Shown in pieces: positions 39,349 through 64,000 of a DNA stretch of 64,000 bases. The position numbers were made by a program, and so were the translations under genes. Below the pieces are notes generated by a model. That model was not told the origin of the DNA, did no database searches, and was given only the letters and a program-made list of their open reading frames with translations. This DNA is from Vitrella brassicaformis CCMP3155 (lineage: Eukaryota > Protista > Chromerida), in contig CDMY01001036.1 in the NCBI GenBank assembly GCA_001179505.1, positions 155,740 through 219,739 on the forward strand, read 5' to 3'. The stretch's first letter is position 1; each line of letters begins with the position of its first letter.

Positions 39349-41903
39349 ATGAGTGAGCCGGCACCGAAGCGGCAGAGGTTGGCGGCCGAGGGAGAGGAGG
39401 ATGATTCGAATGACGGACACCACGAGGCCGTGATGGACACCGACGGCGAACAGCAGCAGCAGCAGCAGGCCACAGCATCGCACGCGACACACAGCATAGA
39501 TCTGGAGGCCTTCGCACAGTCCTTCAGCCAAATCGTAAGCTGCAGCAAACGAAACCACTGGCAAACACACACATCCTCATTGCCTCCTCTCTCTCTGTCT
39601 GTGTGGTGTGTTGTCCACTCAGCCGGTTGTTGTTGCCTACGTCTTTTCGTTCGTGTCGCTTCATTTGGTGGCGGCGCTGCCCCAGCGGCTGTGGCGCCAC
39701 GTCGGCTGCCAGATCACCCGGCTGGTCATGGACACCTACGACACGGCCGAGCGGCGCTTCTGGTGCGGCCTCTCATTCGCCGACGCCTTCGAGTGGGGCC
39801 GGCGGCTCACACGGCTCAGGTCCATCGTGGTCAAATATCCGATAGAGCTTGCCGTCCCGAGCGATTTTGACTTCTTCACTCTGTCGCCGGTGATCGAGAA
39901 GATCGTCACGGCATTGGTGGAGGGCCACAGCGACGGGCGGAGAGGCGCAGCGGCCACAGCAACCGGGCTGCAGGGGCCAACCACATTGGAGTCCATCGAC
40001 ATAAGCAAGGGCGAATCGACCATCATCGTCGACGAGGCCGAGGGCCGCCATATCCTAGCTGCGACAGAGCCGTCGGCGGCCTTCCCCCCGCCCCTCAACC
40101 CGCCCCTCAACCCGCCCCCCACCCTCACATCCCTNNNNNNNNNNNNNNNNNNNNNNNNNNNNNNNNNNNNNNNNNNNNNNNNNNNNNNNNNNNNNNNNNN
40201 NNNNNNNNNNNNNNNNNNNNNNNNNNNNNNNNNNNNNNNNNNNNNNNNNNNNNNNNNNNNNNNNNNNNNNNNNNNNNNNNNNNNNNNNNNNNNNNNNNNN
40301 NNNNNNNNNNNNNNNNNNNNNNNNNNNNNNNNNNNNNNNNNNNNNNNNNNNNNNNNNNNNNNNNNNNNNNNNNNNNNNNNNNNNNNNNNNNNNNNNNNNN
40401 NNNNNNNNNNNNNNNNNNNNNNNNNNNNNNNNNNCCCTCACATCCCTCACGTCCATTATGATCCCGGGATATGAGCTCTCCTATCCCGGCCGCGGGCGCC
40501 AGTGGCAGCTGCCGTCAATCGAGACAGTCCAGGTGCGGAAGACGGTGTATCCGGAGATCGTGGGGGAGCTGGTGGCCACGTCACGGCGCCTCAAGGAGCT
40601 GCAGGTGGAGTGCCATCCTGACGCCATGGCGGACTCGCTGCGGCGCATCCCCACGGCCACGGCCGGCCAGCCGGGGCCGCTGTCACAGCTCGAGGACATC
40701 GGGACGCTCAACGTGAGAAATGGCGCAGTGCGTCTGGAGGGCCTTCAGGTATGCGACGAACCACATAAGCTACACAAAATCAGACAGGGAAGGCGAGAGT
40801 CTGTTTGTAATGTGCGTGTGTCTGTGTGCAGGCTGTCCTCGTCGACCGTGGCTGCCGCTCCATCAAGAAGCTCAGCATCAAGCTCGAGGACTACTCCATC
40901 AACAGCAGCATCTTCGCGACCCTCGCGGCCATCGAGGCCTTTACACTTGCCGTCTGTGTGAGGCCCGATATCCCCGTCGACATCAAGACCGGGGCCTCCT
41001 TCTTCGACCTGTCCCTCCTCTGCGACACTCCCATCCGCCCCGCGCCCTCATTCTTCGTGCAGAGGCACATCCAGCAGATGGCCGCCAAAGCCCTTGATGG
41101 CTTCGCCATCCGCCCTCACCATCTCACCACCGCTCTCGACACGCCCAGCCCCGCTGCCATCGCCGTCGCACGATCCCTGACATTCCCCAGTGCGACGACC
41201 GTGACAGTGTCGGACCAGGACGATTGGGACCCTGCCGATGATGCCGACCAGCCCGACCCGATTGTGCTCGACAGCATGCCTCACAACGCATTCCCCGCTG
41301 TATGGCGTCTCCGGTGCTACAGCGGCAAGGGGCTCGCGAGTGGGCGCAGGCTGGTGACCAAGATGCCGGCTGTCAAACGCATTACACTGTGGAAACCGAA
41401 AGAGGGGCACGCAGTGGGGATGTTGCAGGCGGTGGGTGGGGAGAGGGAGTTGGAGCGTTTTGAGGCCGGCTATGTGACGGATGTGGGTGAGGGGGGGCTG
41501 ACGTGGGGGGACATGGCAGACCAGCTGCGGACCATCAAACGGCTGGATGTTCGTGTAGAGGGTGAGCAGCAACCAATCGCCTCCATTCGCATGCACGCCA
41601 ATTGTGTCTTGTATGTGCCCGTCTGTCTGTCTGTCTGTCTGCGTCATTGTTGCAGTGCCTGAGGATTTGGGCGATGGCGATGCCGCCGGTGAGTTCGGCA
41701 TTGCGTGCGTCAAGTCGCTGCTCAAGATCCGAGGCATCGAGGAGCTCAAGTTCGCGCTGTTGCGGCCTGGAGGGCAGAGCTTCAAGCGGTTGGTGGAGGA
41801 GCGGACGCACGGCGACACCATCGAGGGGCTGGAGGGGCGGTACAGCATCGGGTGGCGGGGATATCGGGGAGATTTCCTCACTCTCAAACCACTCGACACC
41901 TGA
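39349..41903 (+). CDS. Lineage-expanded F-box-like/degenerate-LRR family, copy A (4 exons)
   Basis: MSEPAPKRQR (NLS-like), polyQ, FSQI|PVVVAYVFSFVSLHLVAALPQRLW (F-box-like), AERRFWCGLSFADAFEWGRRL and recurring LxxLxxI/LxV units. Introns in phase. The internal gap flanks overlap. Confidence 0.75.
40135..40434. other. Assembly gap, 300 N (true length probably about zero)
   Basis: Both flanks contain ccctcacatccct, which is contiguous in copy B. Confidence 0.9.
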
Positions 41904-43345
41904 CGAAAATTCGATAGGTACGGTTTGGCTACCTGGTATGGGCGCGCTTGTCCACTGCCGGTCGTGTGTGTTTTGGGCTGTGTGTTTGCCTGTCAGGTCG
42001 GGCCATCAGTTGCTGATGCGTAGAATAGAATGAGGTGCAGAGGGAGGTGGGGGTGCCATGCTTGAGGGATGCTCTCATGCGTGGCCGCTGTGGGGTGGAC
42101 TAAGTAAGCTGCATCGCTCGTCGATGAATGCGTGCTGGTGTTGTCCATGCATGTGAGAACCGAACGTTGAGCACCAGACTAATTGCTCATATTGCCCAAA
42201 GCACTGCCGTTTTCGTCACACACACATGCCTCCGTCTACCAGTATGTCCGTCCCTACGTGTGTGTCTGTGTGCATGGGGCCACCATGCCCCCGACAGACC
42301 GACAGCCAGCAAGACAGCCAGACAGACAGCCATTCGTTGACAAGTGTAAGTCAGTCAAGTCGGTACGACAGAAAGTGTGACGGTCGTTTTGTCGCATGCA
42401 GCCACTCACAAGCACACACATCCAGCCCACCAACATGTGTTGCAATCAATCTCTCCGAGAAATGATGTGTGGGTGCGTCGAGTGGCCAACCGCCTGTAGG
42501 TAGGTCAGCCAGCCAGCCAGTTGCATGACGGAGGGCGGTAAGTGTTGTCTCTCTATCTGGCTCTGCTTTTCCTCTCTCCCTCAGCGAGGTGGGTCTGCTC
42601 ATCCCAGAGAGAATGTTGTTTGTGACGCACCTCACACAGGCTCACTGACGGACGCACACAGGGATGTGTGTGCGTGTGTGTGTGCACAGGGCTGCACGTG
42701 TGTGTGTGTGTGATCGAGCCCATCGTTTTGGTCACTTTATACACACATGCACACAGCAATTTATTGTCTATCTCAGCAAACGGATATATCATCCAGTGTA
42801 TGTATTATCAGTCCGAAGGCGGCGCACTCGACATCCGCTCTCTGGCTGCCCCTCTCTATCCGTGTCTCTCTCTGCCTACCAGAGGTACCTATCGTACCAT
42901 TCACTCATTCACGAACAGTGGCAGTCCATCGTCCGTCCGTCCGTCCGTCTGTCTGTCTGTCTGTCTGTCTGCGTGTCCGTGTGGTGCTATTCATTCATTC
43001 ATTCGTCAAGCACTCCATATTATCTACCAGAGACGAGTGTTACGTACGGTTGGTGCGAGTTGTCTCTCTGTATACCAGTATACGTGTGTGCGTAAGGCCA
43101 CCATGCCTCAGCCACACATCCAGACATCCATATACTCGACAACGCAATTGGAAGAAAGCACCGGCGAGTTGTAGGTGAGCGAGACACAGCCTGGCCGAAT
43201 GAGTATGATCCTCTGTCTGTCAGATCGTCTGCTTCATACTGAGTTGCCCACTCGTCTGCCTTTCCAAGTCGCGTGCGACCTGTCATAGGGTGCTTGTGGA
43301 TGCGTCGCAATGGGGACGTTCCATGACCCTGAGGGTAGGGGCTCA

Positions 43346-43357
43346 GGGTTCAAACCC
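43346..43357 (+). promoter_or_regulatory. Conserved upstream motif GGG(T/C)TCAAACCC (B-box/telo-box-like) of the F-box-like family
   Basis: Also at 39297-39308, 47609-47620 and (minus) 60993-61004, upstream of copies A, C and D. Confidence 0.4.
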
Positions 43358-43496
43358 AAAACCCGCAAAACCCTGTGGTTGTGAATCACACTCTGACGTC
43401 TTCCAGTTTTTCGTACCACGACAGACCCTCAGGCTGCATGCCGTTGCGCTATGAGTTAATGTATTTCACACGCCCCGTTTGGTGGATGATTGAGGG

Positions 43497-45863
43497 ATGA
43501 GTGAGTCGGCATCGAAGCGGCAGAGGCGGTCGGCGGAGAGAGAAGAGGATGACTCGAATGACGGACACCAGGAGGCCGTGATGGACACCGACGGCCAGCA
43601 GCAGCAGCAGCAGCAGCAGCCGGCGGCCACAGCATCGCACACCACACACAGCATAGACCTGGAGGCCTTCGCACAGCAATTCAGCCAAATCGTAAGATGC
43701 ACCGAAGGAAACACTGGCAAACACATCCTCACTGTCTGCTCTCTCTGTGTCTGTGTGGTGTGTGTTGTCCGCTCAGCCGGTTGTCGTCGCCAACGTCTTT
43801 TCTTTCGTGTCGCTTCATTTGGTGGCGGCGCTGCCCCAGCGGCTGTGGTGCCACGTCGGCTGCCAGATCACCCAGCTGGTCATGGACACCCACGACACGG
43901 CCGAGCGGCGCTTCTGGTGCGGCCTCTCATTCGCTGACGCCTTCGAGTGGGGCCGGCGGCTCACACGGCTCAGGTCCATTGTCGTCAAGTACCCCTGGAC
44001 CTTGACGCTCCCTGGTCGGCAGCGACACACTTATGAGTACCGCAATCTGTCGCCGGTGATCGAGAAGCTCGTCACGGCATTGGTGGAGGGGCACAGTGAG
44101 GGGCGGAGAGGCGCAGCGGCCACAGCAGCCGGGCAGCCGGCGCCAACCACCTTGGAGTCCATCGACATCAGCGAGGGATCGATCATAACCGGCGACAAGG
44201 CCGAGGGCCGCGATATCCGAGCTGCGACAGAGCCGTCGGCGGCTCTCTCCCCGCCCCTCAACCCGCCCCCCACCCTCACATCCCTCACGTCCATTATGAT
44301 CCCGGGATATGGGCCCTCCTGTCCCGGCCACGGGCGCCACTGGCAGCTGCCGTCGCTTGAGACAGTCCAGGTGGTGCGAGGGACGGTGTATCCGGAGATG
44401 TTGGGGGGGCTGGTGGCCACGTCACGGTGCCTCAAGGAGCTGCACGTGGAATGCAGTACTTACGCCATGGCGGACTCGCTGCGGCGCATCCCCACGGCCA
44501 CGGCCGGCCAGCCGGGGCCGCTGTCACAGCTGGAGGACATCGGGACCCTCAGGATGTCTAGCGCTGATAGTCTGGAGGGTCTTCAGGTATGCGACGAACG
44601 AAACAAGATTCACAAAATCAGAGAGAGTGGGCGAGAGCTTCTTTGTGATGTGCGTGTCTATGTGTAGGCCGTCCTCGTCGACCGTGGCTGCCGCTCCATC
44701 AAGAAGCTCAGCGTCAAGCTCGAGGGCTCCTACATCACAAGCAGCATCTTCGCGACCCTCTCGGCCATCGAGAGCTTCGCCCGTGCCGTCTGTGTGAGCC
44801 CCGACATCGTCGACATCAAGAGGGCAGATGACTTCGACCTGTCCCTCCTCTGCGACGTCCCCACCCGCCCGGAGCCCTCACTCTTCGTGCAGAAGCACAT
44901 CCAGCAGCTGGCAGCCGGCGCAGCCTGTGTGGCCTTCGACGTCGACCCCCAGCACTTCGCCACCCCTCTCGACACGCCCAGCCCCGCTGCCATCGTCCTC
45001 GCACAGTGCCTGACCTTCCCCAACGTGAAGGATGTGGCGGTGGTGGACCAGGACGATTGGGAGCCTGACGATGACGGCGAACTCGACGTTTACGCCGGCG
45101 ACGAGCTCGACGATGACGCCGGACAGCCCGACCCACTTGTGCTGGACAGCATACCCGACAATGCATTCCCGGACGCATCAGGTCTCCGGTGCCACAGCCG
45201 CAAGGGGCTCGCGATTGGCCGCAGGCTGCTGACCAAGATGCCGGCGGTCAAACGCATTACACTGGGGAGGTCGACAGAGGAGCAAGCGGTGGGGATGCTG
45301 CAGGCGGTGGGTGGGGAGAGGGACCTCGAGTGTTTTGAGGCCACAAGCGTGACTGGCGTGGGTGAGGGGGGACTGACGTGGGGCGACATGGCCGACCAGC
45401 TGCCGACCATCAAACGGCTGGATCTTCGTGTAGAAGGTGAGCTGCCACCTATCGCCTCCATTCACATGCACGCCCATTGTGTCTTGTATGTGCCCGTCTG
45501 TCTGCCCATTGGATGTCATGTCTGCCTTCCTGTCTGTGTGCAGTGCCTGAGGATTTGGGCGATGGCGATGCCGCTGGCGAGTTCGGCATTGCCTGCGTCA
45601 AGTCGCTGCTCAAGATCCGCGGCATCGAGGAGCTCAAGTTCGCGGTGCGGCCAGCCGATACCTTCAAGCGGCTGGTGGAGGAACGAACCAATGGCGACAC
45701 CATCGAGGGGCTGGAGGGGCGGTTCGACATCGAGTGGGGCTGGACGGATGTACATGATGAGCGGAGTGATGGCGATGCCATTGAGGGGCTGGAGGCCCGG
45801 TATGGCATCCGCTGGGAGGGAGATGAGGAAGATGCGCTCACTCTTAAACCACTCGGCACCTGA
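43497..45863 (+). CDS. F-box-like/degenerate-LRR family, copy B (intact, duplicated C-terminal module)
   Basis: Same 4-exon structure, all joins in frame. The last exon has ER..GD.IEGLE.R..I.W twice. Confidence 0.8.
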
Positions 45864-46855
45864 CGACAATTCTACAGGTACGGTTTGGCTGTCTTGTATA
45901 CGCGCGCGTGTCCACTGCCGGTGGTGTCTGTTGGGCTGTATGTTTGCCTGTCAGGTCGGCCCATGTCAGCTGATGCGTAGAATAGAATGAGGTGCAGAGG
46001 GAGGGATGTGGGGGTGCCATGATGGCGGGATGCTCTCATGCGTGGCCGCTGTGGGGTGGACTAAGTAAGCTGCATCGCTCGTCGATGAATGCGTGCTGGT
46101 GTTGTCCATGCATGTGAGAACCGAACGTTGAGCTGCTTGCTGATCGAACTGATTGCTCATATTGCCCAAAGCACTGCCGTTTTCGTCACACACACACATG
46201 CCTCCGTCTACCAGTATGTCCGTCCCTACGTGTGTGTCTGTGTGCATGGGGCCACCATGCCCCGTCAGACCGACAGCCAGCCAGACAGACAGACAGCCAT
46301 TCGTTGACAAGTGTAAGTCTGTCCAGTCGGTACGACAGAAAGTGTGACGGTCGTTTTGTCGCAGGCAGCCACTCACAAGCACACACATCCAGCCCACCAA
46401 CATGTGTTGCAATCAATCTCTCCGAGAAATGATGTGTGGGTGCGTCGAGTGGCCAACCGCCTGTAGGTAGGTCAGCCAGCCAGTTGCACGACGGAGGGCG
46501 GTGGGTGTTGTCTCTCTATCTGGCTCTGCTTTTCCTCTCTCCCTCAGCGAGGTGGGTCTGCTCATCCCAGAGAGAATGTTGTTTGTGACGCACCTCACAC
46601 AGGCTCACTGACGGACGCACACAGGGATGTGTGTGCGTGTGTGTGTGCACAGGGCTGCACGTGTGTGTGTGTGTGATCGAGCCCATCGTTTTGGTCACTT
46701 TATACACACATGCACACAGCAATTAATTGTCTATCTCAGCAAACGGATATATCATCCAGTGTATGTATTATCAGTCCGAAGGCGGCGCACTCGACATCCG
46801 CTCTCTGGCTGCCCCTCTCTATCCGTGTCTCTCTCTGCCTACCAGAGGTACCTAT

Positions 46856-47155
46856 NNNNNNNNNNNNNNNNNNNNNNNNNNNNNNNNNNNNNNNNNNNNN
46901 NNNNNNNNNNNNNNNNNNNNNNNNNNNNNNNNNNNNNNNNNNNNNNNNNNNNNNNNNNNNNNNNNNNNNNNNNNNNNNNNNNNNNNNNNNNNNNNNNNNN
47001 NNNNNNNNNNNNNNNNNNNNNNNNNNNNNNNNNNNNNNNNNNNNNNNNNNNNNNNNNNNNNNNNNNNNNNNNNNNNNNNNNNNNNNNNNNNNNNNNNNNN
47101 NNNNNNNNNNNNNNNNNNNNNNNNNNNNNNNNNNNNNNNNNNNNNNNNNNNNNNN
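46856..47155. other. Assembly gap, 300 N (true length about 30 bp by comparison with the A-B spacer)
   Basis: Flanks ..ggtacctat and agtccatcg are about 30 nt apart at 42887-42925. Confidence 0.9.
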
Positions 47156-47191
47156 AGTCCATCGTCCGTCTGTCTGTCCGTCTGTCTGTCC

Positions 47192-47223
<32 letters not shown>

Positions 47224-47770
47224 GCGTGTCCGTGTGGTGCCATTCATTAATTCATTCATTCGGTCAAGCACTCCATATTACCTACCAGCACCACGGGGAC
47301 AGAGACGGACACAGAGACGAGTGTTACGTACGGTTGGTGCGAGTTGTCTCTCTGTATACCAGTATACGTGTGTGCGTAAGGCCACCATGCCTCAGCCACA
47401 CATGCAGACATCCAGATACTCGACAACGCAATTGGAAGAAAGCACCGGCGAGTTGTAGGTGCGAGCGAGACACAGCCTGGCCGAATGAGTATGATCCTCT
47501 GTCTGTCAGATCGTCTGCTTCATACTGAGTTGTCAACTCGTCTGCCTTTCCGAGTCGCATACGTGGATGCGTCGCAATGCGGACGTTCCACGGCAGGGTA
47601 GGGGCTCAGGGTTCAAACCCAAAACCCACAAAACCCTTGGTTGTGAATCACACTCTGGGTTTAGACGTCTTCGAGTTTTTCATGCCACGACAGACAAGAC
47701 CCTCAGGCTTCCTGCCGTTGCGCTATGAGTTAATGTATTTCACACGCCCCGTTTGGTGGAGAATTGAGCG

Positions 47771-50010
47771 ATGAGTGAGTCGGCATCGAAGCGGCAGAGG
47801 CAGACGGCGGAGGGAGAGGAGGATGACTCGAATGACAGAGACCACGAGGCCGTGATGGACACCGACGGCCAGCAGCAGCAGCAGCAGCAGCAGCAGGCCA
47901 CGGCATCGCACGCCACACACACCATAGATTTGGAGGCCTTTGCTCATCGCTTCAGCCAAATCGTAAGATGCACCGAAGGAAACACAGGCAGACATCCTCA
48001 TTGTCTCCTCTCTCTGTGTCTGTGTGGTGTGTGTTGTCCACTCAGCCTGTCGTCGTCGGCTACGTCTTCTCGTTCGTATCGCTTCACTTGGTGGCGGCGC
48101 TGCCCCAGCGGCTGTGGCGCCACGTCGGCTGCCAGATCACCCAGCTGGTCATGGACACCTACGACACGGCCGAGCGGCGCTTCTGGTGCGGCCTCTCATT
48201 CAGTGACGCCTTCGAGTGGGGCCGGCGGCTCACACGGCTCAGGTCCATCGTCGCCAAGTACCCGAAGAACCTCAACATCCTAAGAGAAACCCGAAGTGGG
48301 CACGTTTATCATCACGTTCACTCTCTGTCGCCGGTGATCGGGAAGTTCGTCACGGCATTGGTGGAGGGCCACAGTGAGGGGCGGAGAGGCGCATTGGCCA
48401 CAGCAACCGGGCAGCAGGCGCCAACCACCTTGGAGTCCATCGACATAAGCGAGGGATCGATCATATCCGCCGACGAGGCCGAGGGCCGCGAGATCAAAGC
48501 GGCCGACCAGCGGTTGGTGGCTCTCTCCCCGCCCCTCGACCCGCCCCCGGCCCTCACATCCATCAGCTCCATTATCATCCCGGGATATGGGCCTTCCTGT
48601 CCCGGCCGCGGGCGCCAGTGGCAGCTGTCGTCGCTTGAGACAGTCCAGGTGCGGGGGACGGTGTATCCGGAGATGTTGGGGGGGCTGGTGGCCACGTCGC
48701 GACGCCTCAAGGAGCTGCACGTGGAATGCACTCTTAACACCATGGCAGGGTCGCTGGCGCAGATCCCTGTGGCAGCCGCGGGCCAGCCGGGCCCCCTGTC
48801 ACAGCTGGAGGACATCGGAACCCTCAGTGTGAGCACGAGCGCTGAGGGTCTGGAGCCCCTTCAGGTATGCGACGAACGAAACAAGATTCACAAAATCAGA
48901 GAGAGTTGGCGAGAGCTTGCTTGTGAATTGCGTGTGTCTTTGTGCAGGCTGTCCTTGTCGATCGTGGCTGCCGCTCCATCAAGAAGCTCAGCGTCAAGAT
49001 CGAGGAAACCCACATCGACAGCGGCATCTTCGCGACCCTCGTGGCCATCGAGGCCTTCGCCCGTGCCGTGTGTGTACGGCGTGACATCCCCGTCGACATC
49101 AAGACTGGGGCAATATATTGGACCAGGGCCTGCTTCTTTGACCTGTCGCTCCTCTGTGACACTCCCACGAGCCCCGCCTCCTCATTCTTCGTGCAAAGGC
49201 ACATCCAGCAGCTGGCCGCCGCATTAGAGGCAGCCCTCTTCACCATCCGCCCCCACCATCTCACCACCCCTCTCGACACGCCCAGCCCCGCTGCCATCGC
49301 CCTCGCACAATGCCTGACATTCCCCAACGTGAAGGATGTGGGAATGGAGACATCACACAACTGGGAGCCTGACGATGATGCCGACCAGCCCGACCCACTT
49401 GTGCTCGACAGCATACCCGACAATGCATTCCCGGCCGCATCGCGTCTCCGGTGCCACAGCCGTAAGGGGCTCGCGATTGGCCGCAGGCTGCTGACCAAGA
49501 TGCCGGCGGCCAAACGCATTGACCTGCGGAACCCGACAGAGGAGCAAGCGGTGGGGATGCTGCAGGCGGTGGGCGGGGGGAAGTCGTTGGGGTATTTCAA
49601 TGCCGATTGGGTGACGGATGTGGGCGAGGGGGGGCTGACGTGGGGCGACATGGCGGACCAGCTGCCGACCATCACACGGCTGTTTATTACCATAGAAGGT
49701 GAGCAGCAACCAATCGGCAGCTCTCGCACGCCAGCCCATTGGACGTTATGTATGCCTTCTTGTGTGTGCAGTGCCTGAGGATGTGGGTGACGGCGATGCC
49801 GCCGGTGAGTTCGGCATTGCGTGCGTCAAGTCGCTGCTCAAGATCCGCGGCATCAAGGAGCTTCTGTTCGAGCTGCGGCGAGGTGGAGGGCAGCACTTCA
49901 GGCGGCTGGTGGAGGAACGGACACATGGCGATACCATTGAAGGGCTGGAGGGGCGGTACGACATCGGCTGGGGGGGATATATGCTCATTCTCCAACAACT
50001 GGACACCTGA
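47771..50010 (+). CDS. F-box-like/degenerate-LRR family, copy C (intact)
   Basis: ORFs 47771, 47968, 48942 and 49699 splice in the same 4-exon pattern. Confidence 0.8.
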
Positions 50011-50929
50011 CTCATCCGTGGCTGCTGTGGGGGAGACTAACTTAAGCTGCATGTTTCATGAGTGTCTGCGTGCTGGACTTGTAAAGACACACACGAGAAT
50101 CAAAGAGTGGTTGAACCTTCGTCTACCAGTATGTCCGTCCCTACGTGTGTGTCCGTGTGCACGGGGCCACCATGCCCCCGACAGACAGACAGACAGACAG
50201 GCAGGCAGCCACCCACACACACATCCAGCCCACCAACATGTGTGGCAATCTCTCCGAGAAATGATGTGTCCGTGCGTGGAGTGGCCAACCGCCTGTAGAT
50301 AGGTCAGCCAGCCAGCCAGTTGCACGACAACAAACTAGCCCAGACAGACAGACATCTATACGAGAAAACCGGATCGATCGCTGTTGGTACGTTGATACAA
50401 GGAAATGGGGCAAGGTCACTGGTTGATGTGATGGATCGACACACGGCCTATACGCAGGACAGTCGGCAACTCGGCAACGCACACAGGCAGGCAAGCAGGA
50501 AATACTCAGTCTTGCGCCACACACATACACCCACACATACACCCACACACACACACGCAGGGGAAGAAGAGATGTCCACATCAGCCACCACACGGAATTC
50601 CGGTCAGTGCGTCGCACTCACTGCATTCATTGCCTCATGTCCCATCCCACAAACCAAAGCCCCTCGCCCAACAAGCCGAGGAAACCAATCGCCAATGCAC
50701 ACAGACGACCGGACGGGACGACTGCCAACAGAAAAAGAGAGACAACACAGCCAAACGAGCTGACAGACACGCGAAGGAACGAACACCCAATAACTACAAA
50801 ACGGCCTTGCTTCGCTTCAACCCACCCCCACCACGTGTATGTGTGTCGGACAACACGTGTGTGGTCCTCCTCCCTTGGTTGATGGGCTGTCTGTTCTGTC
50901 CAGCTGGAGTCAGCCCCTTCCTCAGTCAG

Positions 50930-53900: not shown

Positions 53901-56900
53901 CTCCTCACGGGGGGCACGCTGGACAGGCGCACACACACACATGCAGACAGACAGACAGACAGAGGTGTATGAGTGCTGCCATGGTGTCACTGACCCACCG
54001 CCCGACCGCCCGCCCGACTTACCTTGATGTGTGTGACTGAGGCGGGCCGTGCCCTGCCCAGCGGCAGGGCGTCGGGGGATGCCACCTCGTCGGGCCGATC
54101 GAAGGCCGACATCAGACGCTGCACCAATGAGGGGGGTCACCAAAGGCGTCAGTGGGCTCTAAGCGTGTGTGTGTGTGTGTGTGTGGCTGGTGCATACGAG
54201 CAGTTCGGTGTTGGCGAGCATGTCAGCGGTGAAGTATAGCAGCACGACGGGCAGCGCATTGCCGGTGTCCTGCACGCGCCAGTTCTCCGTTATGTACTTG
54301 AGCGTGTTGCGCACACTCTACACACACCACACACCAATCACACACGCACACAGAGTCTAGCAACCGTGAGCCTGTGCGTGTGTGTGTGTGCGCACTCGTG
54401 TGTAGAGGTGGGGGTCGTAGTTGAGCTGAGAAACAAGCATCAGCCAACAAACAAACAGGCAGGCCACCGTGCAGTGCAGGCATTTTGTTGACTTGGTGTG
54501 GTGTGTTGTGTTGTGTTGTGAGTACGTAGAAGTCCCGGTCGAGTATGTCGAGGGTCCAGCAGGTGAAGACACACAGCTTCCCGATCTCGCTCGCTATACT
54601 CGGCAGACTACACACACACTCAGCGATCGTTGGATGGATGGATGGATGGATGGGCTGTGCGTCTGTGCGTACCGGTAGACTCTGGACGTTGTGAGCGACC
54701 CGATGGGCCGCTTGGGGCGGCCACTCATACCCAGCTCATGACACTCGCCCACACCCTGATGTGCAAACACACACACAGAGACAGACAGATGAACACATAA
54801 AGGGGCTCTGAGCTGCTCATGTGTCATGTCATGTTATGTCATGTGTGTGTGACCTGGAAGAGTCTCTCGAGGTCGGCGTGTCTTCTGAAGTGGATGTTGT
54901 GCCTCTCGCGCGCCTCACTCGGGTACGTCACCACAAACCCATCACCTAGAAACAAACACATTCACCACACACACAGATATGTGCAGCCGTGCAGGGCGTC
55001 GTGTTCGTGTGTGCCTCCCTCCCTCCCTCCCTCCCTCCTTGTCTACCCATTCTAGCCTCGAGCTTCTCAGCGACGGATCTGTTCTCGGCGCACACGACCA
55101 CCTGGACGTACTCGCAGTAGTCGGGGCCGTCCAGGAGCTTCAAACGACGCTGCAGCGGGTCGATGTCCTGCACACACATCAGACACACATACACATACAC
55201 ACACATCCGTGATGTCTGTGTGTCTGATTGTGTGAGGGTGTGGTGGTGGATGCGTACGTCGAGGTCCATGATGCCGTCGTGGATCATCTCGCCGATGAGA
55301 AACAGCGACTGTGCCCATATCAATGGCACGTTGTCGTTCGGGCGACGGTGCTGACTGCAGAGGGCATGGACACACACAGACACACACACATCACGACACT
55401 CTCATTGACTGACTCGCGAGATGCCTTGTGTGTGTGTGTGTGTGACCTCTGTGGTTTTCGTTTCTCGTTGTCGATGTTGTGTCCTTCGACCCAGTAGACC
55501 TCGGGCAGCATCGGATAGCCGTCACGCCACTGCACACAGTTCTGCACTCACAACACACACCACACACCCACCACACACGCGATCACACCCACACACACAT
55601 GCGCCATTCTTGTGTCTGTCTGGTGTGTGTGTGGGATGAGTACGTTCATGATTTTCTCGCGGTAGTGCTCAGCCCGCTTGTCGTCATCTGTCCGTCGGAC
55701 ACACACTTGATGTGTGGGTGTGAGAGTCTCTGTGTGGCCAACCATGGAACAGAGCCTCCAGGTAGAGGTAAGTGAAGAACAGCGGCCACTCGCACTCGAT
55801 GTGCTCAAACTTCTTGAGCTCCCATATCTCGTAATGCAATCTCGAGTGGTCCTCGTTGGCGCACTGGTGGCCGTCCAGCAGGAAACGCTTGCACCCGTGG
55901 CGCCCCTCCAGCAGGCTGCTCAGGGCGTCGCGGGTCTTCTGCAGAGTCTCGCGCGACGACACCGCAAACCCGGGAAAGCCGATGATACTCAGCAACGCCG
56001 CATCCGTCTCCTGCACACATGTGCTGCTATATGTCAGTGTGTGTGTGTGTGTGTGTGTAGGTGGTGTGTGTGGTGACCTTTGAGAATGACTCTCTCGGTA
56101 GGCTTCTGGAGAGGTGCTTTCGGCAGCGGGCGATCTCGTCGGGGAAGCAGATGACTTTGCTGCCAGTGGCGTTGCGCGAGTGGAACAAGTCCAAGCCGTC
56201 GCTGGTCGACAGATGGCGAAACGGCACACACACACGCGCGCGCACTCAGTGATCCCCCCATGTGTGAATGGGTGTACACCACACACACAGAATATGTACG
56301 CGTACATGGCTTCCATGGCCGCCTTGGCCATGCCGATCGAGCTGCAGTTCAACTCTGGCTCGCCGTTGTTGATCTGAACAACGATTCACACACAGATGTG
56401 CAACAGGTGTGGGCGAGCCGGGCCGTGTTTGCCTGCCTTGTTGCCGCGCTCCCAGATGCCGAAATCCTGACAGAGACGCACACAGGTGTCCAGCCGTATG
56501 TTTCCTCCGCGGTCGCCTGGCTGGCTCACCGGTATCTTGTAGGCCTGCTCGATGTAGTAGACCAGGTTCTGCATGAAGTTGACCTCGTGGGCCGTGCAGA
56601 TGATGCGCAAACCGGATGCCGTCATGTTGGCCACCGCCAACACGAAGATCGACGTCGCGTCCACTTGCAGATGGCCCCACTGACACACACACACACAGGT
56701 GTGATGTCCGCCTTTATGTGAGGGTGTTTGTTGGTGCGTCGTTGTGTACTTTGTCGTCGCCGACGACCGTGTTGCCGCTGTTGGTGTCGTATTTGGCGTG
56801 GAGGCAGTCCATGTGGTGGGTGGTGTGCTTGAACTTCTCCACCTTGTGGGACTGCTTCATCATCGCTATAACACACACACACACCCCATTGCATCACGCC

Positions 56901-57515
56901 CATGCCCGTGTATGTGTATGTGTATGTGTATGGGTGTGTCATGGTTGCGTACAGTGCAGCAGGCCTCTCATGTTCCTGACGGCGGCGTTTTCGAGCTGGA
57001 AGGCCCTGTCGCCCGCAGGCACCTTCCGGTACACCAAACCCAGCGCCCACACAGCCAAGATGCTGTACACTGACCATCACAGCACCGATGGACCGATGGA
57101 TGGATGCCACCACAGTCGAACAGACAGACAGACACGCACAAGGAAAAGTCTTTCATTTGTCGGCTGCATGGCTGGCTGGCTGGCTGGGCTGTCCTGCCTT
57201 ATCCTCTCATGTGTTGGTCATGAATTGTCGGTCGTACCGTTGTCGCGCACCCAGGCATCGGTGTAGTTGCCGTGTGTGGTAATGGCAGTCGACGCGGGCA
57301 GGAGCCCTGCATAGATAGAATGACATGACAGGCAGGCACACGCAAGACAATCAGAGGGGACGTTCGGTTCTCGCCATGCATGCCTCTCTGTGTGTGCGTG
57401 TGTGTGGCCGTCAAGTCCCCTCACCTGTGTGGTGGTTTTGCTTCTGCAGGATGAGCCTGTCCACCAGCTGGTAGTGCTTGTCCAGCCTCTGAAGTATCTC
57501 TTCACGGCTCTGCAT
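50930..57515 (-). CDS. Phosphorylase kinase regulatory alpha/beta-like protein (GH15-fold)
   Basis: [24 protein letters not shown]|[47 protein letters not shown]|[108 protein letters not shown]. Confidence 0.92.
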
Positions 57516-57706
57516 GCCGGCAACGCGATGAAACACTCAGGGCCTCCTCTGAAAGAACCCGATGGAAAAGGCAAAGGCAGGGAGGGAAGGGAAAGCTCCG
57601 CAGCTAAGCTCGCAGACCTCCTCAAAAGCGAAACAGCCACGAAAGCAACGCATTGCCGGGAGGCAGGCCTGAAGGTGCTGCGAAGCATTGGACTGATTTG
57701 TGGGCA

Positions 57707-58448
57707 ATGGAGAGCAACGCATCTATCACGGCCTCGTCGCTGCTGGAGCCGCCGCAGCGGCCTGGGGAGACCACTGACAGGCACGTCATCCGGCGCAACA
57801 TCCAGGGCCTGCTGCGGGCCATCCAGCACGAGTATGTGGCGCCCTCCATCTACGTCGCCACTGGAGCTGTGCTCACTGCATGGGGCGCCCGGTGCCTTTT
57901 GCGGATGAATCGGTTCCTCTCTATGCGGTATGCGGACATCCCCTACCAGATCAGGCGGCCCGACAGCCTGGCGAACCGTGTGGCCGCCTTCAAGTGTCTG
58001 GTGCTGGGGGGATCTGTCGTGCCCATCTTCACCCTTGGCTTCGTCTATGTCATGAGGTATACACACACACGGACTGGGACAGCAGACACACAGTCGGAGC
58101 TTGCAAAGGAATGTTGGTCTCTCTCTCTCTCCATGTGTGTGTGTTAGAGTGCGTCCAGGTCCCGATGAGGCCGTGTTGATGCAGCCCGACTGGCAGTACC
58201 AGCTGTCCCGCGCAGGCAAGGTGGCCAAGTATAATGTGGGCGAGTGGCTCAAGCGGCTGGGCCTCACCACAGAGAGTGAGAACATGCGGTCGTGGGTGGC
58301 GATGGCCAAGAAGATGACCATGCACGAGTATTACCGCACCATGGGGCTCGACAAGGAGCTGCTGGCTCAGGCGAGGGAGAGGGACAAGAAGCGACTGGAG
58401 GGGATGGGCCAGCCCATGATTGAGAGCGGGGAAGACCTTGTCCGATAG
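57707..58448 (+). CDS. Hypothetical 2-TM membrane protein (2 exons)
   Basis: Hydrophobic IYVATGAVLTAWGA and LVLGGSVVPIFTLGFVYVM. Intron joins in phase, AG|A GTG CGT CCA. Confidence 0.65.
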
Positions 58449-58822
58449 CCAGACAGATTGTGAGACAGCCAGAATCACGGCATAAGTGGTGTGTGGACGC
58501 ATGTGTCGGTGATATGTTGAGGGGCTGATATGTCGGAAGCTCAAACGTCGTTCGGTCCTCATGCGTGTCGGTACAACTCCAACACGCACTCATTCATCCA
58601 CGAGCGATGCAGCTTACTTAGTCCACCCCACAGCGGCCACACATGAGAGCATCCCTCCAGCATGGCACCCCCACATCTCTCCCTCTGCACCTCATTCTAT
58701 TCTACACATCAGCTAATGATGGGCCGACCTGACAGGCAAACGTACAGCCCAAAACACACCGCCGGCAGTGGACAAGCACGCCCATACCAGGTAGCCAAAC
58801 CGTACGCACCTGTCGTCTTTCT

Positions 58823-60945
58823 CTAGGTGTTAAGCCGTTTGAGAGTGAGGAATCGTCCCAGATATCCCCTCCAGCTGATGTCATACCGCCCCTCCAGCCC
58901 CTCGATGGTGTCGCGATGCGTCCGCTCCTCCACCAGCCGCTTGAAGGCATCGTGGGGCACCGGCTGAAACTTGAGCTCCTTGACGCCTCGGATCTTGAGC
59001 AGCGACTTGACGCACACAATGCCGAACTCGCCGGCGGCATCGCCATCACCCAAATCCTCAGGCACTGCCGACAAGGACACATAAAGGGGGACAGCAGGGA
59101 GAGTCGATTGAGGCGATTGCTTGCAGCTCACCCTCTACACGAAGGTCCAGTACTGTGACGGTCGGCAGCTGATCCACGATGTCGCCCCACGTCAGCCCCC
59201 CCTCACCCACACCCGTCACCGGCCAGGCCTCGAAACACTCCAACTCCCTCTCCCCACCCACCGCCTGCAGCATCCCCACTGCGTGCCCCTCTTTCGACTT
59301 CCACAGTGCAATGCGTTTGACCACCGGCATCTTAGTCACCAGCCTGCGCCCACTCGCGAGCCCCTTGCCGCTGTAGCACCGGAGACGCCATACAGCGGGG
59401 AATGCGTTGTGAGGCATGCTGTCGAGCACAATCGGGTCGGGCTGCTCGTCGTCATCGTCAGGGTCCCAATCGTCCTGGTCCGACACTGTCACGGTCGTCG
59501 CACTGGGGAATGTCAGGGATCGTGCGAGGGCCATGGCAGCGGGGCTGGGCGCGTCGAGAGCGGTGGTGAGATGGTGAGGGCGAAGGACACTGTGTGGGCT
59601 TTGGCGGCCATCTGCTGGATGTGCCTCTGCACGAAGAATGAGGGCGCGGGGCGGATGGGGGTGTCGCAGAGGAGCGACAGGTCGAAGAAGGAGGCCCCGG
59701 TCTTGATGTCGACGATGTCGGAGCTCACACAGACGGCAAGTGTGAAGGCCTCGATGGCCGCGAGTGTCGCGAAGATGCTGCTGTTGATGGAGTAGTCCTC
59801 GAGCTCGACGCTGAGCTTCTTGATGGAGCGGCACCCACGGTCGACGAGGACGGCCTGCACACAGACACACGCAACTCACAAGGAAGCTCTCGCCCTCTCT
59901 CTCTGATTTTGTGTATCTTGTGTGGTTCGTCGCATACCTGAAGGCCCTCTAGATCCTCAGCGCTCGCGCTCACGCTGAGGGTCCCGATGTCCTCCAGCTG
60001 CGCCAGCGGCCCCGGCTGGCCCGGAGCTGCCGCCGGGATGCGCACCAGCGACCCAGCCATGGTGTCAGGGTGGCATTCCACGTGCAGCTCCTTGAGGCGC
60101 CGCGACGTGGCCACCAGCCCCCCCAACACCTCACAGTCATACACCCTCCACAGCCTCCCCTCCACCTGCACCCTCTCGAGCGACGGCAGCTGCCAGTGGC
60201 GCCCGCGGCCGGGGTAGGAGAGCTCATCTTCTGGGATGATAATGGACGTGAGGGATGTGAGGGTCAGGGGCGGGTCGAGGGGAGCCGTCGACGGCTCTCT
60301 CGCAGCTCGGATATCGCGGCCCTCGGCCTCGTCGACGATGATGGTCGACTCGCACTCGCTTATGTCGATGGACTCGAGTGTGCTCCGCCCCTGCCGCCCC
60401 ACTGCTGTGGCCGCTGCGGCTCTCCGCCCGTCGCTGTGGCCCTCCACCAATGCCGTGACGATCTTGTCGATCACCGGCGACAGAGTGCGGTGGTTATACG
60501 CGTATGGCCGCCGACCAGGAGTTTCACTTAGGATCCGAAGGCTCTTCGGGTACTTAGAGACGATGGACTTGAGCTGTTTGAGCCGCCGGCCCCACTCGAA
60601 GGCGTCAGCGAATGACAGGCCGCACCAGAAGCGCCGCTCGGCCGTGTGGTGGGTGTCCATGACCAGCTGGGTGATCTGGCAGCCGACGTGGCGCCACAGC
60701 CGCTGGGGCAGCGCCGCCACCAAATGAAGCGACACGAACGAGAAGACGTAGGCAACGACAACAGGCTGAGTGGACAACACACACCACACAGACACAGAGA
60801 GAGCAGACAATGAGGATGTGTGTGTCTGCCAGTGGATTCGTTTGCTGCATCTTACGACTTGGCTGAATTGCTGTGCGAAGGCCTCCAGATCTATGCTGTG
60901 TGTGGCCTGCTGCTGCTGCTGCTGCTGCTGGCCGTCGGTGTCCAT
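58823..60945 (-). pseudogene. F-box-like/LRR family, copy D (lost N-terminal NLS segment; frameshift in exon 3)
   Basis: 14 nt instead of 18 nt between AAAGCC and CGCCCTCAC at about 59583-59596 shifts the frame. The MSE..KRQR start is replaced by unrelated sequence. Confidence 0.7.
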
Positions 60946-61830
60946 CACGGCCTCCTCGTCTCTGCGGGCGGTGGTGATAACGCGGAATTCTAGGGTTTGA
61001 GCCCTAACCCTCAGGCTGTTGAATCGAAAGGGGAAATGGTGGGCGTGGTGGGCGGCGCCGCTGGAAGACACGCCAGGCGGGCGCTGAGGATGGTGCTGGC
61101 ATGTTTGTCGCATGATTGAGGGTTGGCCGATGTTGACGCAGTTCATTTCATGAGAGACCGACTGACTCGGCCTGCCGTTGCGCTATGAGTTAACGTATGT
61201 CACACACACTTTCATCCCCAAAGCCATGCCTAGCAGGCCGGCAGGCAGGCAGGCCCCTGTCTTTCCTCTCCTCCCTCCCTCTCGTCATATGAGGCATCAT
61301 CACCGGATTTGGTGCACACGTGGCCATGACAGAATGAATCGGCCAGCCAACACGCAAGAATGCAACACTAGCTATCACCCAGCAGTGAGAAAGTGTATAT
61401 CACGCAGCCAACTAAAGATCGTGAAATGAATGAATGGATGGATGGATGGATGGAGACAACACACCAACGTGACAGACACACACGTATGACAAACCGTGAC
61501 CCCCCTCAGCCCACAGCGCCTCTAGCCGCTGACGGGCAGTGTCTCTCAAGCGAAAAGCAGCGACCGGCACATGCTGCCAGCGGCCACAATGAAACAAAAC
61601 CTATGAGCTACAAGTCAGCAGCGGCCCGTCACCTCCCACCTCCACCTCCCTGGCCGTTGCTCTGTTGGCACGGCGTGAGCCCCCCCCCACCCACCGCCAT
61701 GTAGGTGGGCCGACGCACACAAGGCGGGCGACCCGACAGACATACATGGAACCAACATGACACACATCGCTAACACTGTGGGAGTCCACCCATACAGCAT
61801 ACCAAACTGCACCTCCTCTGTGGTCTTCTG

Positions 61831-63720
61831 TTAGGTGTCCAGGGGTTTCAGGATGAGCATGTTCTCCTGAAATCCCCGCAGTGCTTGGAGAGTGAGGAAA
61901 TTTCTCCAAAATCCCCTCCACTCGGTGAGAAACCACCCCTCCGGCTTTTCAATGGCGTCGCCATCAGTCCGCTCATCCACCAGCCGCCTGAAGGCTTCGT
62001 TGGGGATCAGCTGGAACTTGAGCTCCTTGATGCCGCGGATCTTGAGCAGCGACTTGACGCACACAATGCCGAACTCACCGGCGGCATCGCCAACACCCAA
62101 ATCATGAGGGACTGCACATAGACAGACAGACAGACGGGCACATCCAGGACACAATGGGCTGCCATCTGAATGGAGGCGATTGGTTGCTGCTCACCTTTCA
62201 CACTAACATCCAGCCGTTCGATGGTCGGCAGCTGATCCGCCATGTCCCCCAACGTCAGCCCCCCCTCGCCCACACCAGTCACCTTCCTGGCCTCGAAATA
62301 CTCCAATGACCTATCCCCGCCCACCGCCTGCAGCATCCCCACTGCTTGCTCCTCGGTTGGGTGCATCCACAGTTCAATGCGTTTGACCGCTGGCATCTTG
62401 GTCACCAGCCTGCGGCCAATCGCGAGACCCTTGCTGTGGACGGACAGCGACGATATGGCCGGGAATGCATTATCGGGTATGCTGTCCAGCACAAGTGGGT
62501 CGGGCTGGTCGGCGTCATCGTCGAGCTCGTCGCCGGCGTAAACGTCGAGCTCGCCGTCATCGTCAGGCTCCCAATCATCCCACATGTCCACCACCCCCAC
62601 ATCCTTCACGTTGGGGAATGTCAGGGACTGCGCGAGGGCGATGGCAGCGGGGCTGGGCGTGTCGAGAGGGGTGGTGAGGTGGTGGGGGCGGATGAGGAAG
62701 CGCGCTCCGGAGGCTTCGACCGCCAGCTGCTGTATGTGCCTCTGGACGAAGGGGGAGGGCTCCGGGCTCGTGGGAGTGTCGCAGAGGAGGGACAGGTCGA
62801 AGTGCCCGTCGATCTCGATGTCGACAGGAATGTCGGGGCTCACACACACGGTGCGGCTGAAGGCCTCGATGGCCGACAGGTGAGCGAAGATGCTGCTGTC
62901 GGTCCAGTATTCCTCGAATGTGACCTTGAGCTTCTTGATGGAGCGGCAGCCACGGTCGACGAGGACGGCCTACACATAGACACACGCACATCACAAGAAA
63001 GCTCTCACCCTCCCTCTCTGATCTTATGGAGTTCATCGCTCACCTGAAGGCGGTGAAAACCCTCCCTCAAATCCTTGTCCAAAAGGTCCCCCCGCGAAAT
63101 CTGGAATGTGCCGACATCCTCGAGCTGCGACAGTGGGCCCGACTGGCCGGCCGCTGCCACTGGGATCTGCGCCAGCGACTTGGCCATGACGTCAGGGTGG
63201 CATTTCACGTGCAGCTCCTTGAGGCGCCGTAACGTGCCCACCAGCTCCCCCAACACCTCATCCTTCCACACGATCTCTCGCACCTCGACAGTCTCGAGTG
63301 ACCTGGAAACCTGGACAGTCTCGAGTGACGGCAGCTGCCAGTGGCGCCCGTGGCCGGGGCAGGAGAGCTCATATCCCGCGGGGATGCCTGTGATGGATCT
63401 GAGGGATGTGAGGGTGGGGGGCGGGTCGAGGCGCGGGGGGAGACTCGGATCCGTCGACTGCTCCGTCGCAGCTAGGATAACGCGCCCCTCGGCCTCGTCG
63501 ATGATGATGGGCGATTCGCCGTCGCTTATGTCGATGGACTCCAAGGTGGTTGGCGCCTGCCGCCCCGCTGCTGTGGCCGCTGCGGCTCTCCGCCCGTCGC
63601 TGTGGCCCTCCACCAATGCCGTGATGATCTTCTTAATCACCAGCCGCGACAGAGGCATGTAGTCATAAGTGCGCCCTGGGATGCCTCTCGGGATGTATAG
63701 GCCAGGGGGAGACTTGAAGA
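61831..63720 (-). pseudogene. F-box-like/LRR family, copy E (5'-truncated: no exon 1 or F-box-like part)
   Basis: Homology starts at FKSP (about VKYP in the other copies) and downstream exons are in frame. Upstream 63720-64000 is unrelated. Confidence 0.6.
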
Positions 63721-64000
63721 GGTGGGGGGGGGAAACTGTCATTAACCGTAACACTCGTCTGTCTGTCCGCGATACTCATACAAATACAGTCCCATCAGCA
63801 CGCAGAGTCAAACAGGCTCAAGGGGAGGAGGGATCAATCCCCGCCCCATCAGCACACCCCAGTCCCGCAAACCCTCCCCTCCCTCCCCCACGCAGACAGA
63901 AGCTAGTCGCACGCGCGAGGGCGATAGACAAGCGAGAGCGAATCCATCCAGACACATGACTGAATCCCCGACCCTTCCACCCCTCCTTCTCCAACAGCGC

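What the first reader, a model, noticed from the sequence alone, without database searches (positions are those of the whole stretch)
39349..63720. Five-copy cluster of an unnamed F-box-like + degenerate-LRR family, a candidate SCF substrate-receptor repertoire
Spliced proteins read NLS-polyQ-FSQIPVVVAYVFSFVSLHLVAALPQRLW, matching the F-box pattern F..LP....IFSFL....L.....W. About 12 LRR-like units follow (LTRLRSIVV, LESIDIS, LTSLTSIMI, LPSLETVQV, RRLKELHV, LSQLEDIG, RSIKKLSV, FPNVKDV, MPAVKRITL, LPTIKRLDL, IRGIEELKF). Known: rapidly evolving F-box/LRR expansions in nematodes and plants are linked to host-pathogen conflict. Inference: an innate-defence ubiquitin system in a chromerid, in the same neighbourhood as RING genes.
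Basis: partly seen in the sequence, partly recalled or inferred. Interest (0 to 1): 0.8.

Follow-up and report, generated by a model that had tools for sequence, protein, structure and literature searches.

The report
Vitrella-only F-box-like LRR gene family
Five neighbouring copies of a transcribed gene, part of a family of more than 140 found only in the alga Vitrella brassicaformis, encode a leucine-rich-repeat horseshoe behind a very divergent F-box-like head, so they are probably interchangeable target-recognition parts of a protein-tagging (SCF ubiquitin ligase) machine, though binding to Skp1 is only weakly predicted and a role in defence is untested.

Summary
Five paralogous four-exon genes lie at 39349-63760, three on + and two on -, at 77-92% nucleotide identity.

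- **Gaps:** both look like scaffolding artefacts. The flanks of the first overlap by 13 nt and keep the frame; the second is intergenic.
- **Copy state:** copies 2 and 3 are intact and copy 3 is transcribed and spliced. Copy 1 is probably intact. Copy 4 has a frame-breaking indel in exon 3. Copy 5 lacks the N-terminal head.
- **LRR:** Pfam sees no LRR, but AlphaFold gives an alpha/beta solenoid of about 16 units. Its best structural matches are all LRR proteins: COI1, TIR1, D3, FBXL17, RanGAP and ribonuclease inhibitor.
- **F-box:** Pfam sees none. The family-wide N-terminal profile matches Vitrella's own canonical F-boxes (hhalign P 1.8e-5; 0 of 200 shuffles). The window subfamily alone does not. 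The Skp1 complex prediction gives weak support (0.56 against 0.02).
- **Selection:** the head is under strong purifying selection, and the solenoid evolves fast and is a mosaic from gene conversion.
- **Family size:** at least 160 genomic matches and 142 protein clusters; 29 of 30 sampled clusters hold a named Vitrella record and none another organism.

The defence reading has no evidence. The scan had already noted a Skp1-fused relative of this family elsewhere in this genome.

The parts
39349..41903 (+). Copy 1 (public model P0012). Exons are 39349-39534, 39623-40134 then gap then 40435-40748, 40832-41561 and 41656-41903. Probably intact if the gap flanks are merged by their 13-nt overlap.
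40135..40434 (.). Assembly gap 1, inside exon 2 of copy 1. The flanks overlap by 13 nt, and joining them keeps the frame.
43497..45863 (+). Copy 2 (P0005), intact. Exons are 43497-43691, 43777-44586, 44668-45436 and 45544-45863.
46856..47155 (.). Assembly gap 2, in the intergenic spacer. The homologous spacer suggests only about 12-30 nt are missing.
47771..50010 (+). Copy 3 (P0004), intact, transcribed and spliced. Exons are 47771-47962, 48046-48864, 48948-49698 and 49772-50010.
48046..48240 (+). F-box-like head of copy 3 (PVVV... to ...EWGRRL). The I of the 'IP' motif is the last codon of exon 1. Equivalent segments are 39623-39817 (copy 1), 43777-43971 (copy 2) and 60765-60571 (copy 4). The first 60 codons have dN/dS 0.06-0.4.
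58823..61146 (-). Copy 4 (P0001). It has a different 5' exon. Exon 3 carries a length difference that is not a multiple of 3 near 59590, which the public model bridges with an extra intron. It may be a pseudogene.
61831..63760 (-). Copy 5 (P0017, starts at 63742). It has the solenoid only, with no exon 1 and no F-box-like head. The contig ends at 64000.
41903..43496 (+). Spacer after copy 1. It is 94-100% identical to the spacer after copy 2 (45863-47770), far more alike than the gene bodies are.

Best explanation
The five genes belong to a large multigene family found so far only in Vitrella brassicaformis. Each intact copy (~667 aa) has three parts. The first is a disordered acidic/poly-Q N-terminus with a KRQR patch. 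The second is a ~65-residue helical head that is a strongly diverged F-box-like domain. The third is an irregular leucine-rich-repeat alpha/beta solenoid of about 16 units, of the ribonuclease-inhibitor/FBXL type.

The most likely mechanism is that of FBXL-type substrate receptors. The conserved head docks on Skp1, and through it on Cul1-Rbx1. The variable concave face of the solenoid picks the protein to be ubiquitinated.

The repertoire is diversified by tandem duplication and by gene conversion among paralogues.

Shown: copies, gene model, transcription, solenoid fold, selection pattern, mosaicism and restriction to Vitrella. Inferred: F-box identity of the window subfamily, Skp1 binding and ubiquitin-ligase function.
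For: **Fold.** The AF2 model of P0001 has mean pLDDT 72 and alternating strand/helix from residue ~119 to 665. The Foldseek top hits are the F-box/LRR receptors COI1, TIR1 and D3/MAX2 (E 1e-7 to 1e-4), followed by NLRP, ribonuclease inhibitor and FBXL2. The VIA second look gives only LRR proteins at the top: Rna1p/RanGAP Z 11.7, FBXL17 Z 10.7 and ribonuclease inhibitor Z 10.3.

**Head.**
- The 43-sequence family profile has the consensus LPxxxLxxVxxFxxPxxLxxL.
- hhalign against 14 Pfam-positive F-boxes of the same genome gives probability 78%, P 1.8e-5 and score 27.3. Column-shuffled controls score 7.3 +/- 1.5 with a maximum of 14.5, so 0 of 200 reach the real score.
- The best PDB sequence hit of the profile is the FBXO4 F-box at its exact start, but E is 1.
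- AF2 of the head with this alignment reaches pLDDT 80.7, with helices at 24-31, 36-39 and 44-51.

**Skp1.** Vitrella has one Skp1 gene, product P0166. The predicted complex of P0166 with P0001:64-150 scored 0.56 against a best control of 0.02, verdict 'weak support'. The mark was reached by 51 of 78 solved complexes and 2 of 108 mismatched pairs. At 0.60 or under, however, it was reached by only 5 of those 78 solved complexes and by all 4 mismatches that passed. The runs agree in at least 70% of contacts, and the partner's pLDDT is at least 54.

**Other lines.**
- The ten best named ESM-Atlas neighbours are all F-box clusters, scoring 0.92-0.94.
- Three paralogues (P0075, P0088, P0169) are named as, or score as, Skp1_POZ-containing.
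- dN/dS is 0.06-0.4 over the first 60 codons of the head and 0.4-1.8 in the solenoid.
- Strand residues are the least conserved class: 0.59 against 0.73 for helices.
- Spliced RNA of copy 3 is present.
- Max-chi-squared breakpoints are significant in all four triplets, 0 of 500 permutations.
Against: - Pfam F-box, F-box-like and LRR models give nothing for the exons, for 17 close proteins or for 55 distant paralogues.
- The window subfamily's head alone is not significantly like canonical F-boxes. Its hhalign score is 14.3, inside the shuffle range of 8.7 +/- 2.0 with a maximum of 17.4. Its F-box status therefore rests on homology to paralogues that do match.
- The hhalign match covers only 23 columns: helix 1, the loop and the start of helix 2.
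- Fold searches with the isolated head are at noise level, with best Z 3.0 and F-box entries only at Z 2.3.
- The complex score is in the band where passes are 'more often wrong than right unless the guess was likely beforehand'.
- The Atlas hits share only 103-135 of 256 features.
- The Skp1_POZ fusions could be gene-model merges.
Confidence: 0.58

Rival explanations
1. These are LRR scaffold proteins whose conserved N-terminal helices are only a solenoid cap or another kind of docking module. They have no Skp1 binding and no link to ubiquitination. They would act as generic protein-protein adaptors, in the manner of RanGAP or ribonuclease inhibitor.
For: - No Pfam F-box match.
- The window subfamily alone is not F-box-like by hhalign.
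- The top VIA hits include Rna1p/RanGAP and ribonuclease inhibitor, which have no F-box.
- The head's fold search is inconclusive.
- The complex score counts only as weak support.
Against: - The family profile matches the genome's own F-boxes far above shuffles.
- The Foldseek top five are F-box/LRR receptors.
- The Atlas neighbours are all F-box clusters.
- The Skp1 score is 0.56 against 0.02 for controls.
- Paralogues carry Skp1_POZ.
Confidence: 0.28
2. The cluster is mostly decaying duplicated DNA. It would be a family of pseudogenes or selfishly amplified segments whose products have no cellular role.
For: - Copy 4 has a frame-breaking indel and copy 5 is headless.
- Overall dN/dS is high, at 0.5-0.75.
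- Several genomic matches contain stops.
Against: - Copies 2 and 3 have intact four-exon frames.
- Copy 3 is spliced in RNA.
- The first 60 codons of the head have dN/dS 0.06-0.4.
- Most genomic matches have no stop.
- The spacer is not a dispersed repeat.
Confidence: 0.07
3. The hydrophobic stretch PVVVAYVFSFVSLHLVAALP is a signal anchor or transmembrane helix, and the solenoid is a luminal or extracellular receptor domain.
For: The window subfamily has about 18 mostly hydrophobic residues between two prolines. The full-length AF2 model is unsure of this part.
Against: - The homologous segment in distant paralogues is polar and F-box-like, for example LSRDELANVFGHLQPWELT.
- With the family alignment it folds as short packed helices at pLDDT ~83.
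- The stretch contains S, S and H and is short for a membrane span.
- RI/FBXL-type LRRs are typically cytosolic or nuclear (general knowledge).
Confidence: 0.04

Closest known systems
FBXL-type F-box/LRR substrate receptors of SCF ligases (Skp2, FBXL2, FBXL17; plant TIR1, COI1, D3/MAX2, EBF1)
   Same: An N-terminal ~45-residue helical head is followed directly by an alpha/beta LRR solenoid. These proteins are the best full-length Foldseek matches and Atlas structure neighbours. The family head profile matches F-boxes. Docking on Skp1 gets weak support.
   Different: There is no Pfam F-box or LRR match. In the window subfamily helix 1 is one residue shorter and all-hydrophobic (VVVAYVFSF), and the V-C-K-x-W end reads LPQRLW. 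The repeats are irregular, about 25-45 residues. No orthologue was found outside Vitrella in the 30 clusters sampled.
Lineage-specific, rapidly evolving F-box expansions in plants and nematodes. The comparison rests on general knowledge and was not tested here.
   Same: The family is large and clustered in tandem arrays. The adaptor-binding head is conserved and the recognition domain evolves fast. Many copies are truncated or broken.
   Different: The recognition domain here is an RI/FBXL-like LRR, not FBA, Kelch or FTH. The organism is a free-living photosynthetic relative of Apicomplexa. Diversification by gene conversion is shown here. No link to pathogens is known.
Ribonuclease inhibitor / RanGAP (Rna1p) / NLR-type LRR domains
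   Same: They share the alpha/beta horseshoe with one strand and one helix per unit. VIA Z is 9-11.7.
   Different: Those proteins lack an F-box-like head. There is no sequence-level relationship.

Membership tests
F-box (Pfam PF00646 / PF12937) | Sequence match to the curated F-box or F-box-like profile | tested here: not met
   No hit at E<=10 for the exons or 17 close proteins, and none at E<=0.1 for 55 paralogues. The same model finds 15-18 other loci in this genome, none of them in this family.
F-box (Pfam PF00646 / PF12937) | Profile-profile similarity of the family's head to bona fide F-boxes | tested here: met
   hhalign of A4 against A5 gives probability 78%, P 1.8e-5 and score 27.3, against shuffles of 7.3 +/- 1.5 (0 of 200). 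Distant paralogues alone give probability 80%. Only 23 columns align.
F-box (Pfam PF00646 / PF12937) | The same similarity for the window's own subfamily taken alone | tested here: not met
   The score is 14.3, inside the shuffle range (maximum 17.4), and the register differs.
F-box (Pfam PF00646 / PF12937) | Three-helix fold of about 45 residues | tested here: inconclusive
   The AF2 head model has pLDDT 80.7 with helices at 24-31, 36-39 and 44-51. Fold searches are at noise level, with the FBXL2 F-box and a Skp1-F-box entry only at Z 2.3.
F-box (Pfam PF00646 / PF12937) | Binds Skp1 | tested here: inconclusive
   The predicted complex with Vitrella Skp1 scored 0.56 against a best control of 0.02, verdict 'weak support', with the calibration counts given in the For line. 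No experiment is possible with these tools.
Leucine-rich repeat (RI-like / FBXL-like class) | Sequence match to curated LRR profiles | tested here: not met
   There is no LRR family for the window copies. One paralogue hits LRR_At5g56370 at E 0.054. The U2A' LRR in the PDB search has E 1.2.
Leucine-rich repeat (RI-like / FBXL-like class) | Curved solenoid of repeated strand-turn-helix units with a parallel sheet | tested here: met
   The model has about 16-17 strand/helix units. All top Foldseek and VIA matches are LRR proteins, with E down to 1e-7 and Z up to 11.7.
Leucine-rich repeat (RI-like / FBXL-like class) | Regular LxxLxLxx motif with a 23-29 residue period | tested here: inconclusive
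Unit lengths are irregular, about 25-45 residues, with long loops.
SCF (Skp1-Cul1-F-box) substrate receptor | Assembles with Cul1/Rbx1 and delivers a substrate for ubiquitination | not testable with these tools
   There are only indirect hints: Skp1_POZ domains in paralogues P0075, P0088 and P0169.

The most novel reading that the evidence does not exclude
The family is a hypervariable, gene-conversion-diversified repertoire of SCF receptors. It would work as an innate recognition system (antiviral, antibacterial or self/non-self) in a free-living relative of Apicomplexa. The Skp1_POZ-fused members would be self-contained cullin adaptors.
Probability: 0.12. Interest if true: 0.8.

Novelty: new variant of a known kind. 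Interest (0 to 1): 0.45.

Why it matters
If the head is a working F-box, this family would enlarge the recognisable F-box repertoire of Vitrella about tenfold. Only 15-18 loci are Pfam-positive, against at least 142 clusters here.

It would also show a plant- or nematode-style receptor expansion in the closest photosynthetic relatives of apicomplexan parasites. Toxoplasma, by contrast, has only about 18 F-box proteins (PMC11570480).

The family is also a clear case of a large family that is invisible to Pfam, and of diversification by gene conversion in an alveolate. Practically, the public gene models for copies 1 and 4 are distorted by a false gap and by a frameshift.

Tried and rejected
- **Pfam on single exons, 17 close proteins and 55 paralogues:** nothing relevant.
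- **PDB sequence search with the full-length profile:** nothing significant. With the head profile, the FBXO4 F-box comes first but at E 1.
- **Fold search of the isolated head:** noise level in Foldseek and in VIA wide.
- **Transmembrane reading of the hydrophobic stretch:** rejected, because the homologous segment in paralogues is polar.
- **Dispersed repeat or transposon origin of the spacer:** rejected. Only the first ~270 nt recur, and then beside other family members.
- **The look-up of encoding contigs for P0004:** no record.
- **Pfam on six ORFs between copies 3 and 4:** nothing.
- **PDB search for 58101-58448:** nothing.
- **Two literature searches:** no description of this family.
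- **First complex-prediction run:** failed as busy; repeated unchanged.
- **Joined spliced proteins:** Searches used exon references or the database's own full-length records (P0001, P0004 and others), so the joined step was left out.
- none occurred. Read laying was given 2401 letters.


Full report
**What is there.** The window is the last 64 kb of contig C1036 of Vitrella brassicaformis CCMP3155. blastn of one copy against the window finds five paralogous units: three on the + strand (39349-41903, 43497-45863, 47771-50010) and two on the - strand (61146-58823, about 63760-61831).

Copy 3 gives a clean four-exon model with canonical GT..AG introns: 47771-47962, 48046-48864, 48948-49698 (phase 1) and 49772-50010. 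This model equals the public protein P0004.

Run X6 holds a contig that joins 49696 to 49770 with GT..AG ends, which is exactly intron 3. It has no or almost no depth over introns 1 and 2. Runs X3 and X5 cover the introns and look like DNA. Copy 3, or a paralogue at least 95% identical to it, is thus transcribed and spliced.

**The gaps.** Gap 1 (40135-40434) lies in exon 2 of copy 1. The sequence left of it ends, and the sequence right of it begins, with the same 13 nt. Merging the flanks puts both sides in one frame and matches copies 2 and 3 without loss. The 300 N are most likely a scaffolding artefact, and the public model P0012 wrongly drops this part. Continuity remains an inference.

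Gap 2 (46856-47155) lies in the spacer. Its flanks map 12-30 nt apart in the homologous spacer after copy 1.

**State of the copies.**
- Copies 2 and 3 are intact.
- Copy 1 is probably intact.
- Copy 4 has a different first exon. In exon 3 its length differs from copies 1 and 3 by 4 and 7 nt near 59590, which splits the tblastn match into two frames. P0001 bridges this with an extra intron.
- Copy 5 starts inside exon 2 at residue ~60. The 240 nt up to the contig end show no similarity to the head, and P0017 starts at 63742.

**Size and range of the family.** Exon 2 of copy 3 finds at least 160 matches in the genome on about 70 contigs. There are further clusters on C1036, C309 and C13, and most matches have no stop.

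A profile of 17 full-length proteins finds 142 clusters (at 50% identity) among 1.84 billion representatives. I looked up 30 of them. Twenty-nine hold a named Vitrella brassicaformis record and one holds only unnamed JGI records. None names another organism. Some have MMETSP transcripts.

**The solenoid.** Pfam reports no LRR. The AlphaFold2 model of P0001 (pLDDT 72) shows about 16-17 strand-helix units from residue ~119 to 665.
- Foldseek's best hits are COI1, TIR1 and D3/MAX2 (E 1e-7 to 1e-4), followed by NLRP proteins, ribonuclease inhibitor and FBXL2.
- The VIA second look lists only LRR proteins at the top: Rna1p/RanGAP Z 11.7, FBXL17 Z 10.7 and ribonuclease inhibitor Z 10.3.

TM-scores are low (0.2-0.27), as expected for long solenoids of different curvature. 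I take the LRR fold as established at the level of prediction.

**The head.** The window subfamily reads (I/V)P-VVVAYVFSFVSLHLVAALPQRLW. Distant paralogues read like an ordinary F-box start, for example LSRDELANVFGHLQPWELT, and the 43-sequence consensus is LPxxxLxxVxxFxxPxxLxxL.

I built a control alignment of 14 Pfam-positive F-boxes from the same genome. hhalign gives probability 78%, P 1.8e-5 and score 27.3 over 23 columns. Two hundred column shuffles give 7.3 +/- 1.5 with a maximum of 14.5, and the reversed profile gives 8.7.

The signal comes from the distant paralogues, which alone reach probability 80%. The window subfamily alone scores 14.3, inside the shuffle range. For the five copies the F-box reading therefore rests on homology with paralogues that match, plus the following lines:
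- The best PDB sequence hit is the FBXO4 F-box, aligned at its start, but with E 1.
- AF2 of the head with the family alignment reaches pLDDT 80.7 and places short helices at 24-31, 36-39 and 44-51.
- Fold searches of that small model are at noise level, with F-box entries only at Z 2.3.
- The ten best named ESM-Atlas neighbours of P0004 are all F-box clusters (0.92-0.94), but they share few features.

**Skp1.** Vitrella has one Skp1 gene on C278, with product P0166. The complex test of P0166 with P0001:64-150 scored 0.56, 0.56 and 0.57 against a best control of 0.02. The verdict was 'weak support'.

The mark was reached by 51 of 78 solved complexes and 2 of 108 mismatched pairs. At 0.60 or under, however, it was reached by only 5 of those 78 solved complexes and by all 4 mismatches that passed. 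The runs agree in at least 70% of contacts, and the partner's pLDDT is at least 54. Because solved Skp1-F-box complexes exist, a pass may reflect likeness rather than binding.

Three paralogues carry a Skp1_POZ domain or are named for one: P0075 (E 7.7e-12, with a family head at 187-269), P0088 and P0169. This links the family to cullin ligases if the gene models are right.

**Evolution.** Pairwise dN/dS is 0.5-0.75 overall. Over the first 60 codons of the head it is 0.06-0.4, and in the solenoid it is 0.4-1.8. In the model, strand residues are the least conserved class: 0.59, against 0.73 for helices and 0.67 for coil.

The spacers after copies 1 and 2 are 94-100% identical, while the gene bodies are 77-92% identical and dS is 0.19-0.3. 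The best-matching paralogue changes from segment to segment along every copy. Max-chi-squared breakpoints are significant in all four triplets tested, at 0 of 500 permutations. The gene bodies are thus mosaics made by gene conversion or recombination among paralogues, some of them on other contigs.

**Verdict.** The defence idea and the RING neighbourhood carry no evidence. The fast-evolving sheet and the gene conversion fit a recognition repertoire, but they say nothing about its targets.

I found no paper describing this family. PMC11570480 lists only about 18 F-box proteins in Toxoplasma and notes that cryptic F-boxes may exist.

Noticed in passing
window 41903-43496 versus 45863-47770: The intergenic spacers after copies 1 and 2 are 94-100% identical, while the adjacent gene bodies are only 77-92% identical and also diverge at synonymous sites. 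The unit is not a dispersed repeat. This points to recent homogenisation of the spacers, or to conversion of the gene bodies from other paralogues.
   Followed up: partly
window 55684-56352 (-): An exon-like ORF matches phosphorylase b kinase regulatory subunit alpha and beta (PDB 8jfk, E 7.9e-28 and 5.5e-20). An unrelated housekeeping gene therefore separates the three + copies from the two - copies.
   Followed up: partly
proteins P0075, P0088 and P0169 (other contigs of G000): These family members have an N-terminal Skp1_POZ-like domain. P0075 carries Skp1_POZ at residues 3-60, the F-box-like head at 187-269 and the LRR part at about 364-773. Whether these are true fusions or merged gene models was not checked.
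   Followed up: partly
proteins P0109, P0136 and P0139 (other contigs): Some distant family members carry a C-terminal TLDc domain. Five of the 55 scanned do; in P0109 it lies at residues 972-1070.
   Followed up: no
window 59540-59640 (-): Exon 3 of copy 4 is 7 nt shorter than in copy 3 and 4 nt shorter than in copy 1 at this point, which breaks the frame. The public model P0001 avoids the break with an extra small intron.
   Followed up: yes
window 43436-43471 versus 61170-61205: A 36-nt piece just upstream of copy 2's start codon recurs at 92% identity on the same strand, just beyond the 5' end of the inverted copy 4. It may be a remnant of the rearrangement that replaced copy 4's first exon.
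   Followed up: no
window 42664-43180, 46627-47530 and 50100-57300: There are long CT/CA-rich simple-sequence tracts, which translate as SVCLSVCL or HTHTHT. They surround the gene copies, and gap 2 lies within one of them.
   Followed up: no
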